Virus record (IMG/VR): IMGVR_UViG_3300042923_000569 | Span: 1 to 64,000 of that record | Direction: 5' to 3' (one strand) | DNA length: 64,000 bases | Shown here: piece after piece, positions 282 through 43,245 of the stretch | Layout of the letters: every line of letters begins with the position of its first letter | How positions within the stretch are numbered: position 1 is the stretch's first letter | Made by a program: the position numbers and the translations under genes | The notes under the pieces: model-generated | What the model saw: the letters and a program-made list of their open reading frames with translations, nothing else | What the model was told of the DNA's origin: nothing | The model's database searches: none

Positions 282-300
282 GGGGTACATCCTGTACCCC
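282..300 (-). promoter_or_regulatory. 8-bp intergenic hairpin GGGGUACA-GGA-UGUACCCC without U-tract (CsrA-site-like CAGGAUG)
   Basis: Perfect inverted repeat between the gp39 stop and the gp52 SD. Confidence 0.6.
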
Positions 301-308
301 ACTAATTC

Positions 309-2288
309 TTAGTCTTCTTTAGTCCATTCTTTTCGGTCGTCAGCACGTTCCTTATTAAAGATTAGGTCTAAGGTTGCCCCTAGATTGCCATCATCAGTAA
401 TAGCTACTGCAACGCCATTTTCTAATGCATCACGGAAGTTTGAAACTTCTAGAGTCCCAAGACCTTTTGCACGAGTGGCTTTCCAACCTTTCCATTCTTC
501 AGGATCGTATTCATGGACGTTATGACCATAGAAGTATCTTGATTCTTTACCCTTTTCTAGAATAATAAATGGAGTTTTGAAAATATAAATGAATGGATTT
601 TCTGTATCTGCGAATAGTTCAGGCCAGAACTTATAGAAAAAGTTCACGACTAGAGCACCGATGTTTTTACCATCTTCATCTTCGTCAGCACAGATATATA
701 ATTTACCGAAGTTTAAACTATCACGATCTAGTTTTTCTCCAGGAATAATATTTAATGAAGCCATAATGTCATGAATAGCCGATGGTTTGTCAGCCGTACC
801 CATTAGATCCTTAGTCTTCTCTTTACCGTTTACGTTTTGGATTTTACCACGTAATGGAAGAATACCATGAATAGCTGAGTTACGAGCTGCTGTCATTGAA
901 CTGACCGCTGAATCACCTTCTGCAATTAGAAGAATACATTCTTTACGTGGAACAGTATCGTTAACATCACGAAGCTTAGCTACTTTACCTTTAAGTAAAC
1001 GCTTAGCCATTTTGCGATCTTCATCTGCATCTTTCTTATTAGTACGCTCAGCACAACGAGCATAAATCTCTTCGACCCAATCATTATTCTTCTTGATTAG
1101 TTCTACAAAGAATTCTTCGCTTAGTGCATTCTGTACTGGTTTAATGACATTTTCATTAGTTAACTTGGTTTTGATTTGTGAGTTGAATGTTGGAGTATTC
1201 ATCTTAGTGACGTTATAAATCAACAAACCTTCTTCAATATCAGAACGGTTAGGAGTCATCTTCTTTTGCTTAGACTTACGTTCAAGTGCTTTAATTACAC
1301 CCAATGCAAACTTCTGCTGGAACGTATCTAAGTGTGTACCACCTTCTAAGGATGGTGCGTTGTTTACAAGACCTTGCATATGCAAGTTCTTACTCAAACC
1401 CTGTACTGCATTTGGTACGATTAAGAAAGTACTGTTCAAGCCTGTTTCTGCATCGTCAACTTGCAATGACATAGTTTTAGCAGAACCGAACAAACCTTTA
1501 CGTGCAACGGTAATTTTATCACCATTCAAATAAATTTTATAAGTAGGGTTAGCTGCTGCAATTTCTTTAAGAATACTGAAGACTAGTTCAGTAGGTAGAG
1601 TGTGTACTTTAAACACTTCTTTACTGATTTTAAATCTTACTGTAGTTCCTGTTTTTTCAGTAGCAATCTTACGAATAGATGGCTCGTCAATTCCAAGTTC
1701 AGGAAACATTTGCGTTCCTTCTGTGAATTTCTGAGTAAACTTATATGTACCATTATATTCGGAGTTTGCTTTATCTGTTTTGTAAGGCTTACCAGTACGA
1801 TGAATTTCAAGTTCAGCTTTCTCACTAACAATCATTACTACTGAACCACCAAGACCGTTCATACCAACTACGTTGTTACGTTCATCATCATTAAAGTTAC
1901 GTCCAGTTTTCATTTCTGTTAGAACCATAGTACAGACATGTTTCTGTGCTTCTGGTACATAGTCAATGGGAATACCACGACCATTATCGCTAATTTCGAA
2001 CTCAAGTTCATCTTCATTATATGTTACATGCAAAGTTGGGCTTTTAGCACCGGACTTTACGAATTCATCTAATGAGTTGTCCACGATTTCGCGGAATGAA
2101 GTTAGTAAAGCTGGAACCCAACGTAAATTTTGTACGTTAAAACCATCTTCACCGAAAAGTAGTACTGGTTGTTCATGTTCTGATTTAGAACCCAAATACA
2201 TTTCAGTACGGATACGAGCATGTTGATATTCAGTTAGTTGTTGAACACCGTGTTCTGCTAGGACTGAACTTTTCTTTTCCTTTGCCAT
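309..2288 (-). CDS. gp39: Topoisomerase II ATPase+TOPRIM subunit (T4 gp39+gp60 as one ORF)
   Basis: GHKL motifs EIVDNSLDE, DNGRGIP, GMNGLGG; TOPRIM EGDSA, PLRGKI, DEDEDG; KGLG. Confidence 0.95.
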   Translation of the reverse strand: MAKEKKSSVLAEHGVQQLTEYQHARIRTEMYLGSKSEHEQPVLLFGEDGFNVQNLRWVPALLTSFREIVDNSLDEFVKSGAKSPTLHVTYNEDELEFEISDNGRGIPIDYVPEAQKHVCTMVLTEMKTGRNFNDDERNNVVGMNGLGGSVVMIVSEKAELEIHRTGKPYKTDKANSEYNGTYKFTQKFTEGTQMFPELGIDEPSIRKIATEKTGTTVRFKISKEVFKVHTLPTELVFSILKEIAAANPTYKIYLNGDKITVARKGLFGSAKTMSLQVDDAETGLNSTFLIVPNAVQGLSKNLHMQGLVNNAPSLEGGTHLDTFQQKFALGVIKALERKSKQKKMTPNRSDIEEGLLIYNVTKMNTPTFNSQIKTKLTNENVIKPVQNALSEEFFVELIKKNNDWVEEIYARCAERTNKKDADEDRKMAKRLLKGKVAKLRDVNDTVPRKECILLIAEGDSAVSSMTAARNSAIHGILPLRGKIQNVNGKEKTKDLMGTADKPSAIHDIMASLNIIPGEKLDRDSLNFGKLYICADEDEDGKNIGALVVNFFYKFWPELFADTENPFIYIFKTPFIILEKGKESRYFYGHNVHEYDPEEWKGWKATRAKGLGTLEVSNFRDALENGVAVAITDDGNLGATLDLIFNKERADDRKEWTKED

Positions 2289-2322
2289 TTTTTAATTCCC
2301 TTTATTGTTTCTTAGCCAGTAT

Positions 2323-2351
2323 ATTATAGCATAAATTGTTTCTTTGTTTCA
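2323..2351 (-). promoter_or_regulatory. TGAAAC-class promoter of topoisomerase operon
   Basis: TGAAAC-17 bp-TATAAT with extended -10 TGc. Confidence 0.8.
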
Positions 2352-2380
2352 AAAAAATAACGACGCATATAGCGTCGTTA
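2351..2380 (-). terminator. Intrinsic terminator
   Basis: TAACGACGC/GCGTCGTTA stem followed by a T7 run on the minus strand. Confidence 0.8.
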
Positions 2381-2384
2381 ATAT

Positions 2385-2750
2385 TTATAGAAGAACTAAG
2401 ATAGCAATAATGACGTAGTGAGTCAAATGGTGTGCCATCTGGTCTAATCCTAAGTACCACCAGAACTGAGGTTTAGTACTGTCAGTAGTTCGTGATGCCT
2501 CAACCTTTACTTTATCTACAATAAAATGCACTACAAAGTCTAATACTGCAACAGCAAGTGCAATTTTAAATCCAAAGAATAAACCAATTAAGAAAGTACC
2601 GATGAAATGTACCGCTGCGTGTGCAGTTAATGGTAATTCCCATCCTTCTTTCTTAAACTTACCTAACATGTAAGTACCCTGCAAAGGGTAATCACATACA
2701 AAATGCTTAATTTGAAATGCTATTAAAAGAATAAAAAGTGTGACAATCAT
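2385..2750 (-). CDS. DUF3307-like membrane protein
   Basis: HFVCDYPLQ, L..H..VH, HFIVD..K, GLDQMAHH pattern; hydrophobic helices. Confidence 0.75.
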   Translation of the reverse strand: MIVTLFILLIAFQIKHFVCDYPLQGTYMLGKFKKEGWELPLTAHAAVHFIGTFLIGLFFGFKIALAVAVLDFVVHFIVDKVKVEASRTTDSTKPQFWWYLGLDQMAHHLTHYVIIAILVLL

Positions 2751-41695: not shown

Positions 41696-41705
41696 AATCT
41701 TCCTT

Positions 41706-41730
41706 AAAAAGTACCGTCAAGTGACGGTAC
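41706..41730 (-). terminator. Terminator before the pseudo-terminase gene
   Basis: GTACCGTCA/TGACGGTAC plus T5. Confidence 0.65.
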
Positions 41731-41739
41731 ATAGTACTA

Positions 41740-42240
41740 TTAAATCTGTTTTTGTGTATATGTTAGGTCCATATAAGTCTTAAATGGTCCATATAGTGCT
41801 TCAGTATTGTTTCGTTCGTTGTAAATATCGATACTTAGAGTTAAACGAGGAAGATATGTTCCATTTTCACTACGAACCAACCACCAGCCAGGATAAAAAC
41901 GCTTTTTAGAGCGTGTACTTTTCCTGAAAGTACCGATACCTAATGGATCATCATATAAAATATCAATAATAGTGTCTGTATCATTAATCGGATAGTCGCC
42001 TAATGCTTTTGATGCATTGGTCGAATCAGTCACTACAATTTCTGCATATGTGAATGTTTCATTAAGTAATTCTTCAAGTTCTGAAATAGTTTTGAATTTC
42101 AATATTCCAGTACTGGTAAAGAACTCTAAACCTGTACGTTCGGTAGTACCTTCATCATAATTAACTAGAATACCCATCTTTTCACCAGTATTAGTTTCAA
42201 CAATAAATGAATATTCAGTTAGTACTTTAAGAATTGCCAT
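41740..42240 (-). CDS. Conserved hypothetical protein
   Basis: TAATG-coupled to rnh; KS..Y.PGW, YGPFKT. Confidence 0.65.
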   Translation of the reverse strand: MAILKVLTEYSFIVETNTGEKMGILVNYDEGTTERTGLEFFTSTGILKFKTISELEELLNETFTYAEIVVTDSTNASKALGDYPINDTDTIIDILYDDPLGIGTFRKSTRSKKRFYPGWWLVRSENGTYLPRLTLSIDIYNERNNTEALYGPFKTYMDLTYTQKQI

Positions 42241-43229
42241 TATTCATCCTTGCTTGTAAACAATTTAACATATGATTCGGGTGAGTTTTGAACATGGACT
42301 AGTTCATACTTAGCTGCGAAACGTAAGAAGTGTACTCCAACCATAGGAATAGACTTTTGACCCCTACCGAAGATCTGTTCATCCATAATTGCAATGACTT
42401 CTTCTGGTTGTTGGGTTAAATCTACTAATTTCTTATTATGTGCATACATTTGACGCACAGTAACTTCTTCACCATCATGACGAGTCCAGTTTGTATTCAT
42501 GAAACTATTCCACGCATAACCTTGAGCAATACGATCATCATATGCTTCACGAATTCCAACACGTTTCTTAGTACTTTTCATTGGTGCACCGGGATAAGCA
42601 CTGAAAACGTTATCAGATGTATCACCACGGATACATTTTTCAAATAGAATGAATTCAGGATCGGGAATCGCTAGTGCATTACCTTTCTTATCAGTTACTA
42701 ATTCACCTTTAAGGTTAAAAATACCACTAATAGTGTACATTTGTTCTTGTACTGGATTGTATTGTTTAACGTTATGGTTTAGAAGTTGCTGGAAGTCGGT
42801 ATCAGTACTTAGGATAATGTGATTATCTTCTGGATGGGTTTGAATCCAGCGTGCAATATAGTCATCTGCTTCACACTTAGATGAACGTAGAAGAGTACTG
42901 TTAGTTTTATTATCAACGAAATCTAGGAAATCGTTAATCATTTCAAACATAATTTGTGATTCTTCTTTTTCGTCTTGTGTTCTTGAGTCTGCTTTATCAA
43001 CGCGGTTCAATTTATAATAAGGGTCATAATCTTTACGCCATGACCGACCTTCAGCACAGAAAACAACATGGTCAGCAGAGAACTGATCATTCATTTTCTT
43101 CAAGCCGCTTAAGGTGATGTGCAATGCTAATCCAACTTTAGTCCATATGTCGGAAGAACGTGAGGCCACGTTAATTGCACGGTGGAAACAGTTTTGTGTA
43201 TCCACCAAAAGGTAGGTTTTGTTAGTCAT
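42240..43229 (-). CDS. rnh: T4-type RNase H / 5'-3' flap exonuclease (start moved to MTNKTY)
   Basis: [36 protein letters not shown]. Confidence 0.9.
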
Positions 43230-43231
43230 TT

Positions 43232-43245
43232 GGAACTCCATTTCC
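43232..43245 (-). promoter_or_regulatory. GGAA-AUGGAG-UUCC hairpin with the rnh SD in an ANGGAN hexaloop
   Basis: Perfect 4-bp stem; two more GGA immediately upstream. Confidence 0.4.

What the first reader, a model, noticed from the sequence alone, without database searches (positions are those of the whole stretch)
282..43245. CsrA/RsmA-like GGA-loop hairpins on the translation starts of the replication genes: a candidate host-coupled translational regulon
Seen (RNA sense): gp52 leader GGGGUAC-AGGAU-GUACCCC (282-300); nrdA SD AC-AAGGAU-GU (19408-19417); exonuclease GUAC-AGGAU-GUAC covering SD and AUG (21338-21350); helicase CAA-AUGGAU-UUG (26733-26744); primase CAU-AGGAU-AUG (27780-27790); uvsW ACUC-AAGGAU-GAGU over the AUG (34195-34208); uvsX leader 11-bp stem with AGGAU loop about 20 nt from a second GGA in the SD (36745-36769); gp32 UUGAU-AAGGAA-AUCAA (37830-37845); rnh GGAA-AUGGAG-UUCC (43232-43245). 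Two of these (gp52, uvsX) are strong non-SD hairpins with the same loop and no U-tract. I did not see such hairpins at the capsid, scaffold or portal starts. Established: CsrA binds GGA in hairpin loops (CANGGANG; SELEX RUACARGGAUGU; CsrB repeats CAGGA[U/C/A]G). Inference: translation of phage DNA-replication genes is gated by host CsrA (carbon status) or by a phage RegA-like or CsrA-like protein.
Basis: partly seen in the sequence, partly recalled or inferred. Interest (0 to 1): 0.8.

Follow-up and report, generated by a model that had tools for sequence, protein, structure and literature searches.

The report
GGA-loop RNA hairpins at phage gene starts
A giant enterobacterial phage carries small, evolutionarily conserved RNA hairpins that display a GGA motif at or just before the ribosome-binding sites of several DNA-replication genes. 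They look like binding sites for the host regulator CsrA, but binding is untested and the pattern is neither limited to replication genes nor shared by all of them.

Summary
The window is from a Rak2/GAP32/CBB-like jumbo myovirus, not from T4. All nine quoted sequences exist as written.

- **Conserved sites:** Seven are real RNA structures in 8-15 related genomes. These are the RecA/UvsX leader, topoII-A (gp52) leader, exonuclease, UvsW, SSB, FEN/RNaseH and, weakly, primase. Four of them show compensatory stem changes.
- **Key site:** The RecA-leader loop is A-N-G-G-A in 15/15 genomes although its stem sequence changes. About 80 loops of ordinary orthologous terminators almost never hold GGA.
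- **Rejected or weak:** The helicase "hairpin" is primase coding sequence. nrdA has only 2-3 base pairs.
- **Enrichment:** Inside the window it is real. 10/17 replication genes against 10/58 others have a GGA-loop stem of at least 5 bp, and 37% of replication-start GGAs against a 10.6% background.
- **Limits:** The portal and several virion or unknown genes also have conserved hairpins. Replication-type genes outside the window show no enrichment (2/10 against 15/100).
- **CsrA fit:** The motifs match CsrA sites closely. Phage GUACAGGAUGUAC differs from the E. coli CsrB repeat GUUCAGGAUGAAC by one flipped base pair. No CsrA homologue is found in the window, and none of the 40 listed phage matches (of 88) belongs to this clade.

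The CsrA operator reading is plausible (about 0.4) but unproven, and "replication regulon gated by carbon status" overreaches.

The parts
36745..36769 (-). RecA/UvsX leader hairpin (11 bp, loop GGA, or A-A-GGA-U once the A-U pairs open). It lies 18 nt after the SSB stop and 22 nt before the RecA SD.
   Evidence: Folds at -13.6 kcal/mol. In 15 genomes, 5 of 7 stem pairs show compensatory changes, 96% of cells are paired and 0/500 shuffles reach this; A-N-G-G-A is invariant. Outgroup T4-like phages have a hairpin here but without GGA.
36733..36736 (-). RecA/UvsX Shine-Dalgarno GGAG, within the conserved UUUCAUUUCAUGGAG. This would be the second GGA site of the leader.
282..300 (-). topoII-A (gp52-like) leader hairpin GGGGUAC-AGGAU-GUACCCC. 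It lies 8 nt after the topoII-B stop and 22 nt before the SD GAGG.
   Evidence: Folds at -13.5 kcal/mol. The stem is conserved in 12 genomes with one covarying pair. The loop holds GGA in 8/12 and has lost it in GAP32, BF, Yen9-04 and L083.
21338..21350 (-). Exonuclease start hairpin GUAC-AGGAU-GUAC. The AUG (21343-21341) sits in the loop and 3' arm, and the SD UAGGAG lies just upstream.
   Evidence: The stem is kept in 11 genomes while the loop varies: AGGAU, AAGGAU, AACGGAU, AAUGGAU. Folds at -5.8 kcal/mol. It is the same 13-mer as at 285-297.
34195..34208 (-). UvsW-like helicase start hairpin ACUC-AAGGAU-GAGU, with the AUG at 34200. The SD AAGGA lies upstream.
   Evidence: Invariant in 11 relatives although the upstream sequence diverges. 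One distant genome has UCA-UGGA-UGA. Folds at -4.2 kcal/mol.
34164..34176 (-). Second hairpin CUUCA-GGA-UGAAG in UvsW codons 9-13, 31 nt after the first GGA.
   Evidence: Identical to a CsrB repeat unit. Largely explained by the conserved L-Q-D-E-V residues. One distant genome keeps a GGA-loop hairpin with a different stem.
37830..37845 (-). SSB (gp32-like) SD hairpin UUGAU-AAGGAA-AUCAA.
   Evidence: 3 of 4 pairs show compensatory changes, 95.5% of cells are paired, and slid controls give 23-55%. Folds at -1.9 kcal/mol.
43231..43246 (-). FEN/RNaseH SD hairpin UGGAA-AUGGAG-UUCCA.
   Evidence: Relatives have GGAA/UUCC, UGAAAA/UUUUCA and UGAA/UUCA stems around (A)A(U/C)GGAG. Folds at -3.9 kcal/mol.
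27780..27790 (-). Primase SD hairpin CAUA-GGA-UAUG (weak).
   Evidence: Close relatives have CAAA-GGA-UUUG, one compensatory change; it is lost in distant relatives. Folds at -0.9 kcal/mol.
19408..19417 (-). nrdA SD ACAAGGAUGU. A sequence match to the CsrA SELEX core, with only 2-3 bp of stem.
   Evidence: Conserved as sequence in 7 relatives; I-K have ACAAGGAAGU. Folds at -2.0 kcal/mol, not different from shuffles.
51315..51343 (-). Terminator-like hairpin with a GGAGA loop, 29 nt before the SD CAUGGAG of the small gene that precedes the DNA polymerase.
   Evidence: The loop CGGAGA is kept in 5 of 6 relatives.
60466..60484 (-). Portal SD-in-loop hairpin, a counter-example to replication specificity.
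   Evidence: 6/6 relatives; G-U becomes G-C in CBB and GAP32.
22383..22396 (-). Virion-protein gene SD hairpin UUAU-AAGGAA-AUAG, another counter-example.
   Evidence: 10/10 relatives, with longer stems of different sequence in I-K.
32667..32680 (-). SD hairpin CAAAA-GGAA-UUUUG of an unknown middle gene close to its promoter.
   Evidence: 9/12 relatives with 4 different stems.

Best explanation
**What is there (shown).** A family of short RNA hairpins in the middle-gene transcripts of Rak2/GAP32/CBB-like jumbo phages. Each exposes A(N)GGA(N) in its loop.

They come in two layouts:
- **Two-site leaders.** A stable hairpin with a GGA loop sits about 22-37 nt upstream of a GGA-containing SD. Examples are RecA/UvsX, topoII-A and the small gene ahead of the DNA polymerase. 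Outside the window, the late sigma factor gp55 has the same layout.
- **Start-site hairpins.** A weak 4-5 bp hairpin carries the SD, or the GG-AUG start itself, in its loop. Examples are SSB, FEN, primase, exonuclease and UvsW. Outside the window, gp46 fits too.

**How it most likely works (inferred).** The hairpins are operator sites for a dimeric protein that reads GGA loops. The host's CsrA/RsmA is the best candidate. It would bind the loop GGA and the SD or start-codon GGA, compete with the 30S subunit, and so tune translation of a subset of middle genes. Alternatively it could protect these mRNAs.

**Status of each step.**
- Shown: the hairpins exist, are conserved, covary, are enriched in the window, and resemble known CsrA sites.
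- Inferred: any binding, its direction (repression or protection), and any link to host physiology.
For: **Loop constraint**
- The RecA-leader loop is A-N-G-G-A in 15/15 genomes, with N being A, C or U. Meanwhile 5 of 7 stem pairs changed compensatorily.
- N is most often C, which weakens pairing with the anti-SD but is neutral in the A(N)GGA code.
- Loops in nine orthologous sets of ordinary hairpins and terminators hold GGA in about 1 of 80 cases.
- Loops ahead of RecA hold GGA in 15/15 genomes, topoII-A in 8/12, gp55 in 8/8, the 51292 gene in 6/7 and the polymerase in 3/7.

**Variable N position**
- The same variable-or-deleted N recurs at the exonuclease (none, A, AC, AU) and at gp46 (none, A, C).

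**Covariation**
- The SSB and FEN SD hairpins covary although they are worth only -2 to -4 kcal/mol. That suggests they are selected as recognition elements rather than as blocks to the ribosome.

**Resemblance to CsrB**
- CsrB repeats extracted from E. coli are NNNCA-GGA-UGNNN hairpins. GUUCAGGAUGAAC against phage GUACAGGAUGUAC is one flipped base pair.
- 41% of CsrB GGAs have stems of at least 5 bp, against 37% in replication-gene starts and 10.6% background.

**Published consensus**
- The high-affinity CsrA/RsmE site is an ANGGAX hexaloop on a stem, and omitting N is tolerated (PMC4005645).
- The RsmZ-2 hairpin has the loop AAGGAU (PMC4066749), as do UvsW, gp55 and the window's RecA leader.

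**Spacing and host**
- Loop-GGA to SD spacing is 22-24 nt in the RecA, gp55 and topoII-A leaders. By established knowledge (Mercante et al. 2009, from memory) this is inside the range a CsrA dimer can bridge.
- The window encodes no CsrA. None of the 40 phage records listed out of 88 with a CsrA homologue belongs to this clade.
- All known hosts are Enterobacterales, which have near-identical CsrA/RsmA (established knowledge).
Against: - No binding or expression data exist.
- GGA is also the SD core, so for the start-site hairpins the motif is confounded with ribosome binding.
- Conserved SD-in-loop hairpins also occur at the portal, two virion genes, GroES and unknown genes. This points to a general design feature of start sites.
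- Many replication genes lack them, and the enrichment is not seen outside the window (2/10 against 15/100).
- The topoII-A loop lost GGA in four relatives while the stem stayed. That hairpin therefore has a function that does not need GGA.
- CAGGAUG as a heptamer is not over-represented in the window (7 found, 5 expected).
- Among all 260 hairpins of at least 6 bp on the sense strand, only 5% have GGA loops, about what base composition predicts.
- CsrA is most active in fast-growing cells, so simple repression of replication genes looks counter-productive for the phage.
- In T4 infection CsrB is reported to be stabilised (PMC9697503), which argues against a timer based on CsrA being released.
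Confidence: 0.4

Rival explanations
1. Purely cis-acting RNA architecture with no dedicated regulator. On this view the weak hairpins hold the SD or AUG single-stranded in a loop, and they cap very short 5' UTRs against 5'-end-dependent decay. The strong intercistronic hairpins would be processing or stability barriers, or leaky terminators. GGA would appear in loops because it is the SD, or an SD-like standby site for 30S subunits.
For: - Many hairpin-bearing genes sit 10-30 nt after a TGTGNTATAAT promoter: exonuclease, FEN, primase, 32664, 8661 and gp55.
- Late transcripts also begin with conserved hairpins that have no GGA loop (upstream of 43418).
- SD-in-loop hairpins occur in every gene class (about 15% of genes).
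- In relatives the RecA-leader hairpin is followed by UUUUAUUU and looks like an intrinsic terminator. An equivalent hairpin between gene 32 and uvsX exists in distant T4-like phages.
- The topoII-A stem persists without GGA.
Against: - It does not explain the invariant A-N-G-G-A in the RecA-leader loop across 15 genomes when other terminator loops drift freely.
- The common N=C (ACGGAU) leaves only 3 nt able to pair with the anti-SD, too few for a standby SD.
- GG is conserved directly before the AUG in exonuclease, UvsW and gp46, which is an unfavourable context for initiation.
- UvsW, gp46, RecA and topoII-A are internal cistrons, not mRNA 5' ends.
Confidence: 0.3
2. The hairpins are operators for an unidentified RNA-binding protein encoded by the phage. 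It would be a functional analogue of T4 RegA that happens to read GGA loops, and it would shut off middle-gene translation late in infection.
For: - The GGA loop upstream of RecA is specific to the Rak2-like clade and absent from outgroup phages that keep the hairpin. This fits a clade-specific factor.
- T4 sets the precedent of a phage translational repressor acting on replication genes (T4 annotation; established knowledge).
- These genomes encode hundreds of unknown proteins.
Against: - No candidate protein was identified. There is no CsrA homologue in the window and none from this clade among the listed phage matches.
- The RegA homologues listed are in genomes of 228 kb or less.
- The motif equals that of a host protein already present in every host, which is the more economical reading.
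Confidence: 0.15
3. Chance plus selection by the reader. The GGA comes from SD sequences, short A/U-rich flanks pair by accident in a 36% G+C genome, and the reader picked the replication genes after seeing the pattern.
For: - 25% of all GGAs in the window have a flanking stem of at least 4 bp, and 35-40% of all gene starts do.
- The helicase, nrdA, DnaQ and RNaseH1 cases fall apart on inspection.
- There is no enrichment outside the window.
Against: - Flank-shuffle and natural-background tests give p of 0.001 or below for the window.
- There is covariation at RecA, SSB and FEN.
- The loop GGA is invariant over changing stems.
Confidence: 0.1

Closest known systems
CsrA/RsmA binding sites: mRNA leaders such as glgC and hcnA, and the CsrB/RsmZ sponge repeats
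   Same: - GGA sits in the loop of a short hairpin with an A(N)GGA(N) loop code.
- One site overlaps the SD or start codon, and a second lies 20-35 nt away.
- Individual phage hairpins are near-identical to CsrB repeat units and to the RsmZ-2 loop AAGGAU.
   Different: - Located on mRNAs of a virulent jumbo phage, at replication, recombination and late-sigma genes.
- No evidence of binding.
- Several sites are single.
- The same architecture also occurs at structural genes.
- A biological rationale for repression by CsrA during infection is unclear.
T4 RegA translational repressor regulon
   Same: A set of early or middle genes for DNA replication and recombination would be co-regulated at translation initiation by one RNA-binding protein.
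   Different: By established knowledge, RegA operators are AU-rich, unstructured sequences around the AUG, not GGA-loop hairpins. No RegA homologue was seen for this clade, and whole genomes were not searched.
T4 gene 32 and gene 43 autogenous translational operators
   Same: RNA structure at the ribosome-binding site of the SSB and polymerase genes. The SSB leader here is A-rich and unstructured ahead of the SD hairpin.
   Different: No pseudoknot or 8-nt-loop operator was recognised. The same kind of hairpin occurs on many genes, so it is not gene-specific autoregulation.
Intrinsic (Rho-independent) terminators and intercistronic stabiliser hairpins
   Same: The two strong hairpins follow stop codons. 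In relatives the RecA-leader hairpin has a U-rich tail.
   Different: In the window neither has a U tract on the sense strand. Their loops are under sequence constraint, unlike the ten or so ordinary terminators of the window.
T4 RegB endoribonuclease sites (GGAG in early SDs)
   Same: A GGA(G) motif in SD regions of pre-late genes, in a structured context.
   Different: Most loops here are GGAU or GGAA, not GGAG. No RegB homologue was looked for.

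Membership tests
CsrA/RsmA target sites (Csr/Rsm regulon) | GGA exposed in a hairpin loop, ideally an ANGGAX hexaloop directly on a stem (Duss 2014, PMC4005645) | tested here: met
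   UvsW ACUC-AAGGAU-GAGU, SSB UUGAU-AAGGAA-AUCAA and FEN UGGAA-AUGGAG-UUCCA fit. So do the RecA leader A-N-GGA-U in 15 genomes and the exonuclease in Yen9-04 (GUAC-AAGGAU-GUAC). The window's exonuclease and topoII-A sites are the variant without N.
CsrA/RsmA target sites (Csr/Rsm regulon) | A binding site overlaps the SD and/or the start codon, so that binding blocks the ribosome | tested here: met
   SSB, FEN and primase have the SD in the loop. Exonuclease, UvsW and gp46 have the AUG in the loop or 3' arm.
CsrA/RsmA target sites (Csr/Rsm regulon) | Two or more GGA sites within bridging distance (about 10-63 nt) for the CsrA dimer | tested here: inconclusive
   Met for RecA (22-24 nt), gp55 (22 nt), topoII-A (22 nt to GAGG, 31 nt to GGA), exonuclease, UvsW and FEN. 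Not met within -40..+10 for SSB, primase and nrdA.
CsrA/RsmA target sites (Csr/Rsm regulon) | Direct, GGA-dependent binding by CsrA | not testable with these tools
   Needs gel shift, footprinting or CLIP.
CsrA/RsmA target sites (Csr/Rsm regulon) | Expression changes when CsrA activity changes | not testable with these tools
   Needs reporter fusions or infection of csrA and csrB/csrC strains.
Intrinsic terminators | G+C-rich hairpin followed directly by a U tract on the transcribed strand | tested here: not met
   Neither 282-300 nor 36745-36769 is called on the minus strand. 36744-36770 is called only on the antisense strand. Relatives of the RecA-leader hairpin do have UUUUAUUU.
T4 RegA regulon | A phage-encoded RegA protein and AU-rich operators at the AUG | tested here: inconclusive
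   RegA homologues occur in 2368 phage records. The rows listed are all genomes of 228 kb or less. Whole Rak2-like genomes were not examined. The sites here are GGA hairpins, not RegA-type sequences.
Phage-encoded CsrA homologues | A CsrA-family gene in the phage genome | tested here: not met
   Best tblastn match in the window has E=0.85. 88 phage records carry a homologue; the 40 listed include none of this clade. The organism tally shows one unidentified Erwinia record and four Xanthomonas records.

The most novel reading that the evidence does not exclude
Rak2/GAP32/CBB-like jumbo phages have recruited the host's CsrA/RsmA as their translational regulator of middle genes, doing the job RegA does in T4. 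CsrB-like GGA-loop hairpins would be written into the leaders of RecA/UvsX, topoisomerase II, SSB, FEN, exonuclease, UvsW and gp46, and also of the late sigma factor gp55. The replication programme and the middle-to-late switch would then be tied to the state of the host Csr system. Alternatively, the phage transcripts would act together as a CsrA sponge that reprogrammes host metabolism.
Probability: 0.3. Interest if true: 0.8.

Novelty: new variant of a known kind. Interest (0 to 1): 0.55.

Why it matters
Translational control in virulent phages is known mainly from T4, where RegA, gp32 and gp43 are all phage-encoded. If a host global regulator reads conserved operators on the replication, recombination and late-sigma mRNAs of a jumbo phage, that would be a new kind of host-phage coupling. 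It would give a simple handle on the infection programme, through csrA or csrB/csrC genotype or the carbon source. It would also add a large set of natural CsrA sites that carry covariation data.

In the library searched I found no report of host CsrA acting on lytic-phage mRNAs. [quoted passage not shown] The CBB genome paper describes promoters and terminators only (PMC5259590).

If the hairpins turn out to be purely structural, they still document a conserved SD-in-a-loop design for start sites in this phage family.

Tried and rejected
- **Rfam scan of the window:** no family reached threshold, so there is no known RNA element or CsrB-like sponge.
- **CsrA homologue:** none in the window. 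None of this clade appears among the 40 listed of 88 phage records.
- **RegA:** present in many T4-like phages, but no Rak2-like genome appeared among the listed rows. Inconclusive.
- **DNA-level operator (GTAC-N5-GTAC palindrome):** rejected. The spacing between half-sites varies from 5 to 7 nt, and the half-sites covary (GTAC to GAAC/GTTC) in relatives. That fits RNA pairing, not a protein-DNA site.
- **Helicase site:** rejected, because it is primase coding sequence.
- **DnaQ and RNaseH1 hairpins found by my own scan:** not conserved.
- **NTP-pyrophosphatase hairpin:** lies in the upstream coding sequence.
- **Heptamer CAGGAUG:** not enriched.
- **GGA loops among all hairpins of at least 6 bp:** not enriched.
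- **Out-of-sample test in CBB:** no enrichment for replication-type genes.
- **A timer in which CsrB decays after host shut-off and frees CsrA:** not supported by T4 data, where CsrB is reported stable.
- **FEN alignment (A3):** not structure-consistent because loop lengths differ, so its covariation was read by eye rather than counted.
- **Operators' note about a tool called read laying:** no such tool was on hand, so it did not apply.
- **Toxin or effector genes:** none was met.

Full report
**Identity of the window**

Megablast places the window in the Rak2/GAP32/CBB group of jumbo myoviruses. It is about 81% identical to Pectobacterium phage CBB and Cronobacter phage GAP32, with hosts across the Enterobacterales. 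It equals positions 1-64000 of a 357,873-bp IMG/VR contig.

Almost all genes lie on the minus strand and are syntenic with CBB. I built a table of 75 genes with start codons refined by SD position and by the lengths of the CBB orthologues. From the CBB annotation I classed them as 17 replication, recombination or nucleotide-metabolism genes (R), 30 structural or packaging genes (S) and 28 others (O).

The CBB genome paper places this region in a "divergent RpoD-like" promoter class (-35 TGAAACG) that precedes the DNA-synthesis genes. It gives late genes the motif ATAAATA, and it says nothing about translational hairpins (PMC5259590). I saw both promoter types in the window.

**The observation**

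All nine quoted strings are present in the RNA sense at the stated coordinates.

- Two are strong intercistronic hairpins. 282-300 follows the topoII-B stop, and 36745-36769 follows the SSB stop. Both fold at about -13.5 kcal/mol with z about -3.5. Neither has a sense-strand U tract, although the window holds about ten textbook terminators.
- The rest are weak, at -0.9 to -5.8 kcal/mol.
- In SSB, FEN, primase and nrdA the GGA is the SD.
- In exonuclease and UvsW the GGA directly precedes and overlaps the AUG, and the SD lies upstream.
- The helicase string is the end of the primase reading frame (K-W-I-stop), and the helicase uses a GAGG further on.

**Is it more than chance?**

Inside the window, yes.

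- A perfect stem of at least 5 bp (G-U allowed) around a 3-8 nt loop holding GGA occurs within -40..+10 of 10/17 R, 6/30 S and 4/28 O genes (Fisher p=0.0014).
- With GGA and AUG held fixed and the other letters shuffled, the R class is expected to give 2.5+-1.4.
- Taking every GGA in the window as a natural background, 10.6% have such a stem. In R starts the figure is 37% (p=0.0003), in S starts 9% and in O starts 16%.

The claim that structural starts lack such hairpins is wrong for the portal and for virion gene 58326.

An out-of-sample test in CBB did not reproduce the enrichment. I took replication-type genes that lie outside the window: gp55, gp46, gp47, endonuclease VII, the clamp loader, a pol III alpha fragment, an nrd-like gene, NMNAT, a deoxynucleotidase and a DNA methylase. 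They gave 2/10, against 15/100 for other genes.

About 15% of genes in this phage family therefore carry an SD-in-loop hairpin whatever their function. The window holds an unusually dense cluster of them on replication genes.

**Conservation**

I fetched the orthologous regions of 12-15 related genomes and extracted every start region.

- *RecA/UvsX leader.* The hairpin is present in all 15 genomes. 5 of 7 stem pairs changed on both sides, 96% of cells are paired and 0/500 shuffles reach this. The loop positions A-N-G-G-A are invariant, with N being A, C or U. The hairpin is followed by the conserved UUUCAUUUCAUGGAG, so a second GGA lies 22-24 nt downstream. More distant T4-like phages (RecA 55-63% identical) also have a hairpin between gene 32 and uvsX, but their loops lack GGA.
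- *Ordinary hairpins and terminators.* Across the same genomes, nine orthologous sets (about 80 loops) drift freely and almost never contain GGA.
- *topoII-A leader.* The stem is kept, with one covarying pair. The loop GGA is present in 8 of 12 genomes and replaced in GAP32, BF, Yen9-04 and one other.
- *SSB.* 3 of 4 pairs are compensatory and 95.5% of cells are paired.
- *FEN.* The stems GGAA/UUCC, UGAAAA/UUUUCA and UGAA/UUCA all surround the same SD loop.
- *Exonuclease.* GUAC...GUAC is kept while the loop reads AGGAU, AAGGAU, AACGGAU or AAUGGAU.
- *UvsW.* ACUCAAGGAUGAGU is invariant although the upstream sequence diverges.
- *Primase.* One compensatory change among close relatives only.
- *Not conserved.* My scan's hits at DnaQ and RNaseH1.

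Outside the window, two further cases fit.

- The late sigma factor gp55 has UAAAAC-AAGGAUC-GUUUUA at the 5' end of its leader. It is invariant in 8 genomes, lies 22 nt before CAUGGAG, and is accompanied by a second hairpin with the SD in its loop.
- gp46 has GGCA-(A/C/none)GGA-UGCU around its AUG.

Conserved SD-loop hairpins also exist at the portal, at virion genes 22379 and 58326, at GroES and at unknown genes 32664 and 8661. Counting only conserved cases gives R 7/17 against 8/58 for the rest (p=0.02).

**Comparison with CsrA sites**

I extracted CsrB from E. coli K-12. Its 22 GGAs sit mostly in NNNCA-GGA-UGNNN hairpins, and 41% have stems of at least 5 bp. That is about the rate found in R starts here.

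- The CsrB unit GUUCAGGAUGAAC differs from the phage 13-mer GUACAGGAUGUAC by one flipped base pair. The phage 13-mer occurs twice in the window.
- CUUCAGGAUGAAG occurs in both CsrB and UvsW codons 9-13.
- Duss et al. define the high-affinity site as an ANGGAX hexaloop on a stem and show that N can be omitted (PMC4005645).
- The RsmZ-2 hairpin carries AAGGAU (PMC4066749).

The recurring pattern in the phage is G-G-A fixed, A two positions upstream, and N free or deleted. It appears at RecA, exonuclease and gp46, and it is this code. N=C, the commonest state in the RecA leader, leaves only three bases able to pair with the anti-SD. That speaks against a mere standby SD.

The window encodes no CsrA homologue. 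Of the 88 phage records that carry one, the 40 listed include none of this clade. Any CsrA involved would therefore be the host's.

**Weighing**

The loop constraint at the RecA leader and the gp55 leader argues for a trans-acting reader of GGA loops. So does the conserved GG-AUG context, and so does covariation of hairpins too weak to block ribosomes. Host CsrA/RsmA is the simplest candidate, at confidence about 0.4.

Several points count against a clean CsrA replication regulon.

- The hairpins also occur on structural and unknown genes.
- Many replication genes lack them, and the enrichment fails outside the window.
- The topoII-A loop lost GGA in four lineages.
- The start-site hairpins are confounded with the SD.
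- Many hairpin genes lie close to their promoters, which fits a role in 5'-end stability or SD presentation.
- There is no obvious benefit to the phage from CsrA repression in fast-growing cells. T4 data show CsrB being stabilised rather than lost (PMC9697503).

I therefore rate the cis-acting explanation at about 0.3, an unknown phage protein at about 0.15, and chance at about 0.1. Chance is the likely answer for the helicase and nrdA sites, and probably for the primase and polymerase sites.

**Novelty**

In the searched library I found no report of host CsrA acting on mRNAs of a virulent phage. CsrA appears in phage work only in three ways:

- as a pleiotropic host factor in resistance screens (PMC7553319);
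- as a phage-encoded homologue whose role "has not been previously tested" (PMC11879866);
- as a regulator of CRISPR-Cas.

If confirmed, this would be a new variant of a known mechanism. If not, it is a conserved but ordinary design of start sites.

Noticed in passing
window 38069-38040 and 37939-37910 (minus strand); also 43287-43258: Two tandem middle-type promoters (TGAAACG, 13 nt, TGTGGTATAAT) precede the SSB gene. The same type precedes the FEN, exonuclease and topoII-B genes. A second -35-like element, GGAATGA, appears before the primase gene and gene 32664.
   Followed up: partly
L193 about 8055-8110 (same phage, contig about 66-67 kb, outside the window): The leader of the late sigma factor gp55 starts with the hairpin UAAAAC-AAGGAUC-GUUUUA, invariant in 8 genomes. 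It lies 22 nt before the SD CAUGGAG, which itself sits in the loop of a 6-bp hairpin.
   Followed up: partly
L193 about 9985-10010: The start of the gp46 recombination nuclease has GGCA-(A/C/none)GGA-UGCU around its AUG. This is the same GG-AUG-in-hairpin design as at exonuclease and UvsW.
   Followed up: partly
window 34164-34176 (minus strand): UvsW codons 9-13 form CUUCA-GGA-UGAAG, identical to a CsrB repeat unit. It is mostly explained by conserved amino acids, but one distant genome keeps a GGA-loop hairpin there with a different stem.
   Followed up: partly
window 7887-8396 (-), 7289-7819 (-), 45407-45691 (-): By synteny with the CBB annotation, the phage encodes homologues of translation initiation factor IF3, ClpS and GroES. 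A phage IF3 is relevant to any story about start-site selection.
   Followed up: no
window about 43378-43392 (+ strand gene 43418); also upstream of 56778 and 24350: Late transcripts (ATAAATA motif) begin with conserved hairpins that covary but have no GGA loop. At 24350 the late-promoter motif itself sits in the hairpin loop.
   Followed up: no
window 285-297 and 21338-21350 (minus strand): The exact 13-mer GUACAGGAUGUAC occurs twice, in the topoII-A leader and at the exonuclease start.
   Followed up: yes
window 36744-36770 (+ strand): Read on the antisense strand, the RecA-leader hairpin is followed by TTTTT and is called terminator-like. The A run that causes this is not conserved in relatives.
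   Followed up: partly
window 50954-50980 (minus strand): The terminator upstream of the DNA polymerase has the loop AUGAA in the window, but AGGAU in CBB and AAUGGAU in two other relatives. GGA comes and goes in this loop.
   Followed up: partly
window 1-258: The window starts at the end of the source contig, so the topoII-A (gp52-like) gene is cut off after its first 86 codons.
   Followed up: yes
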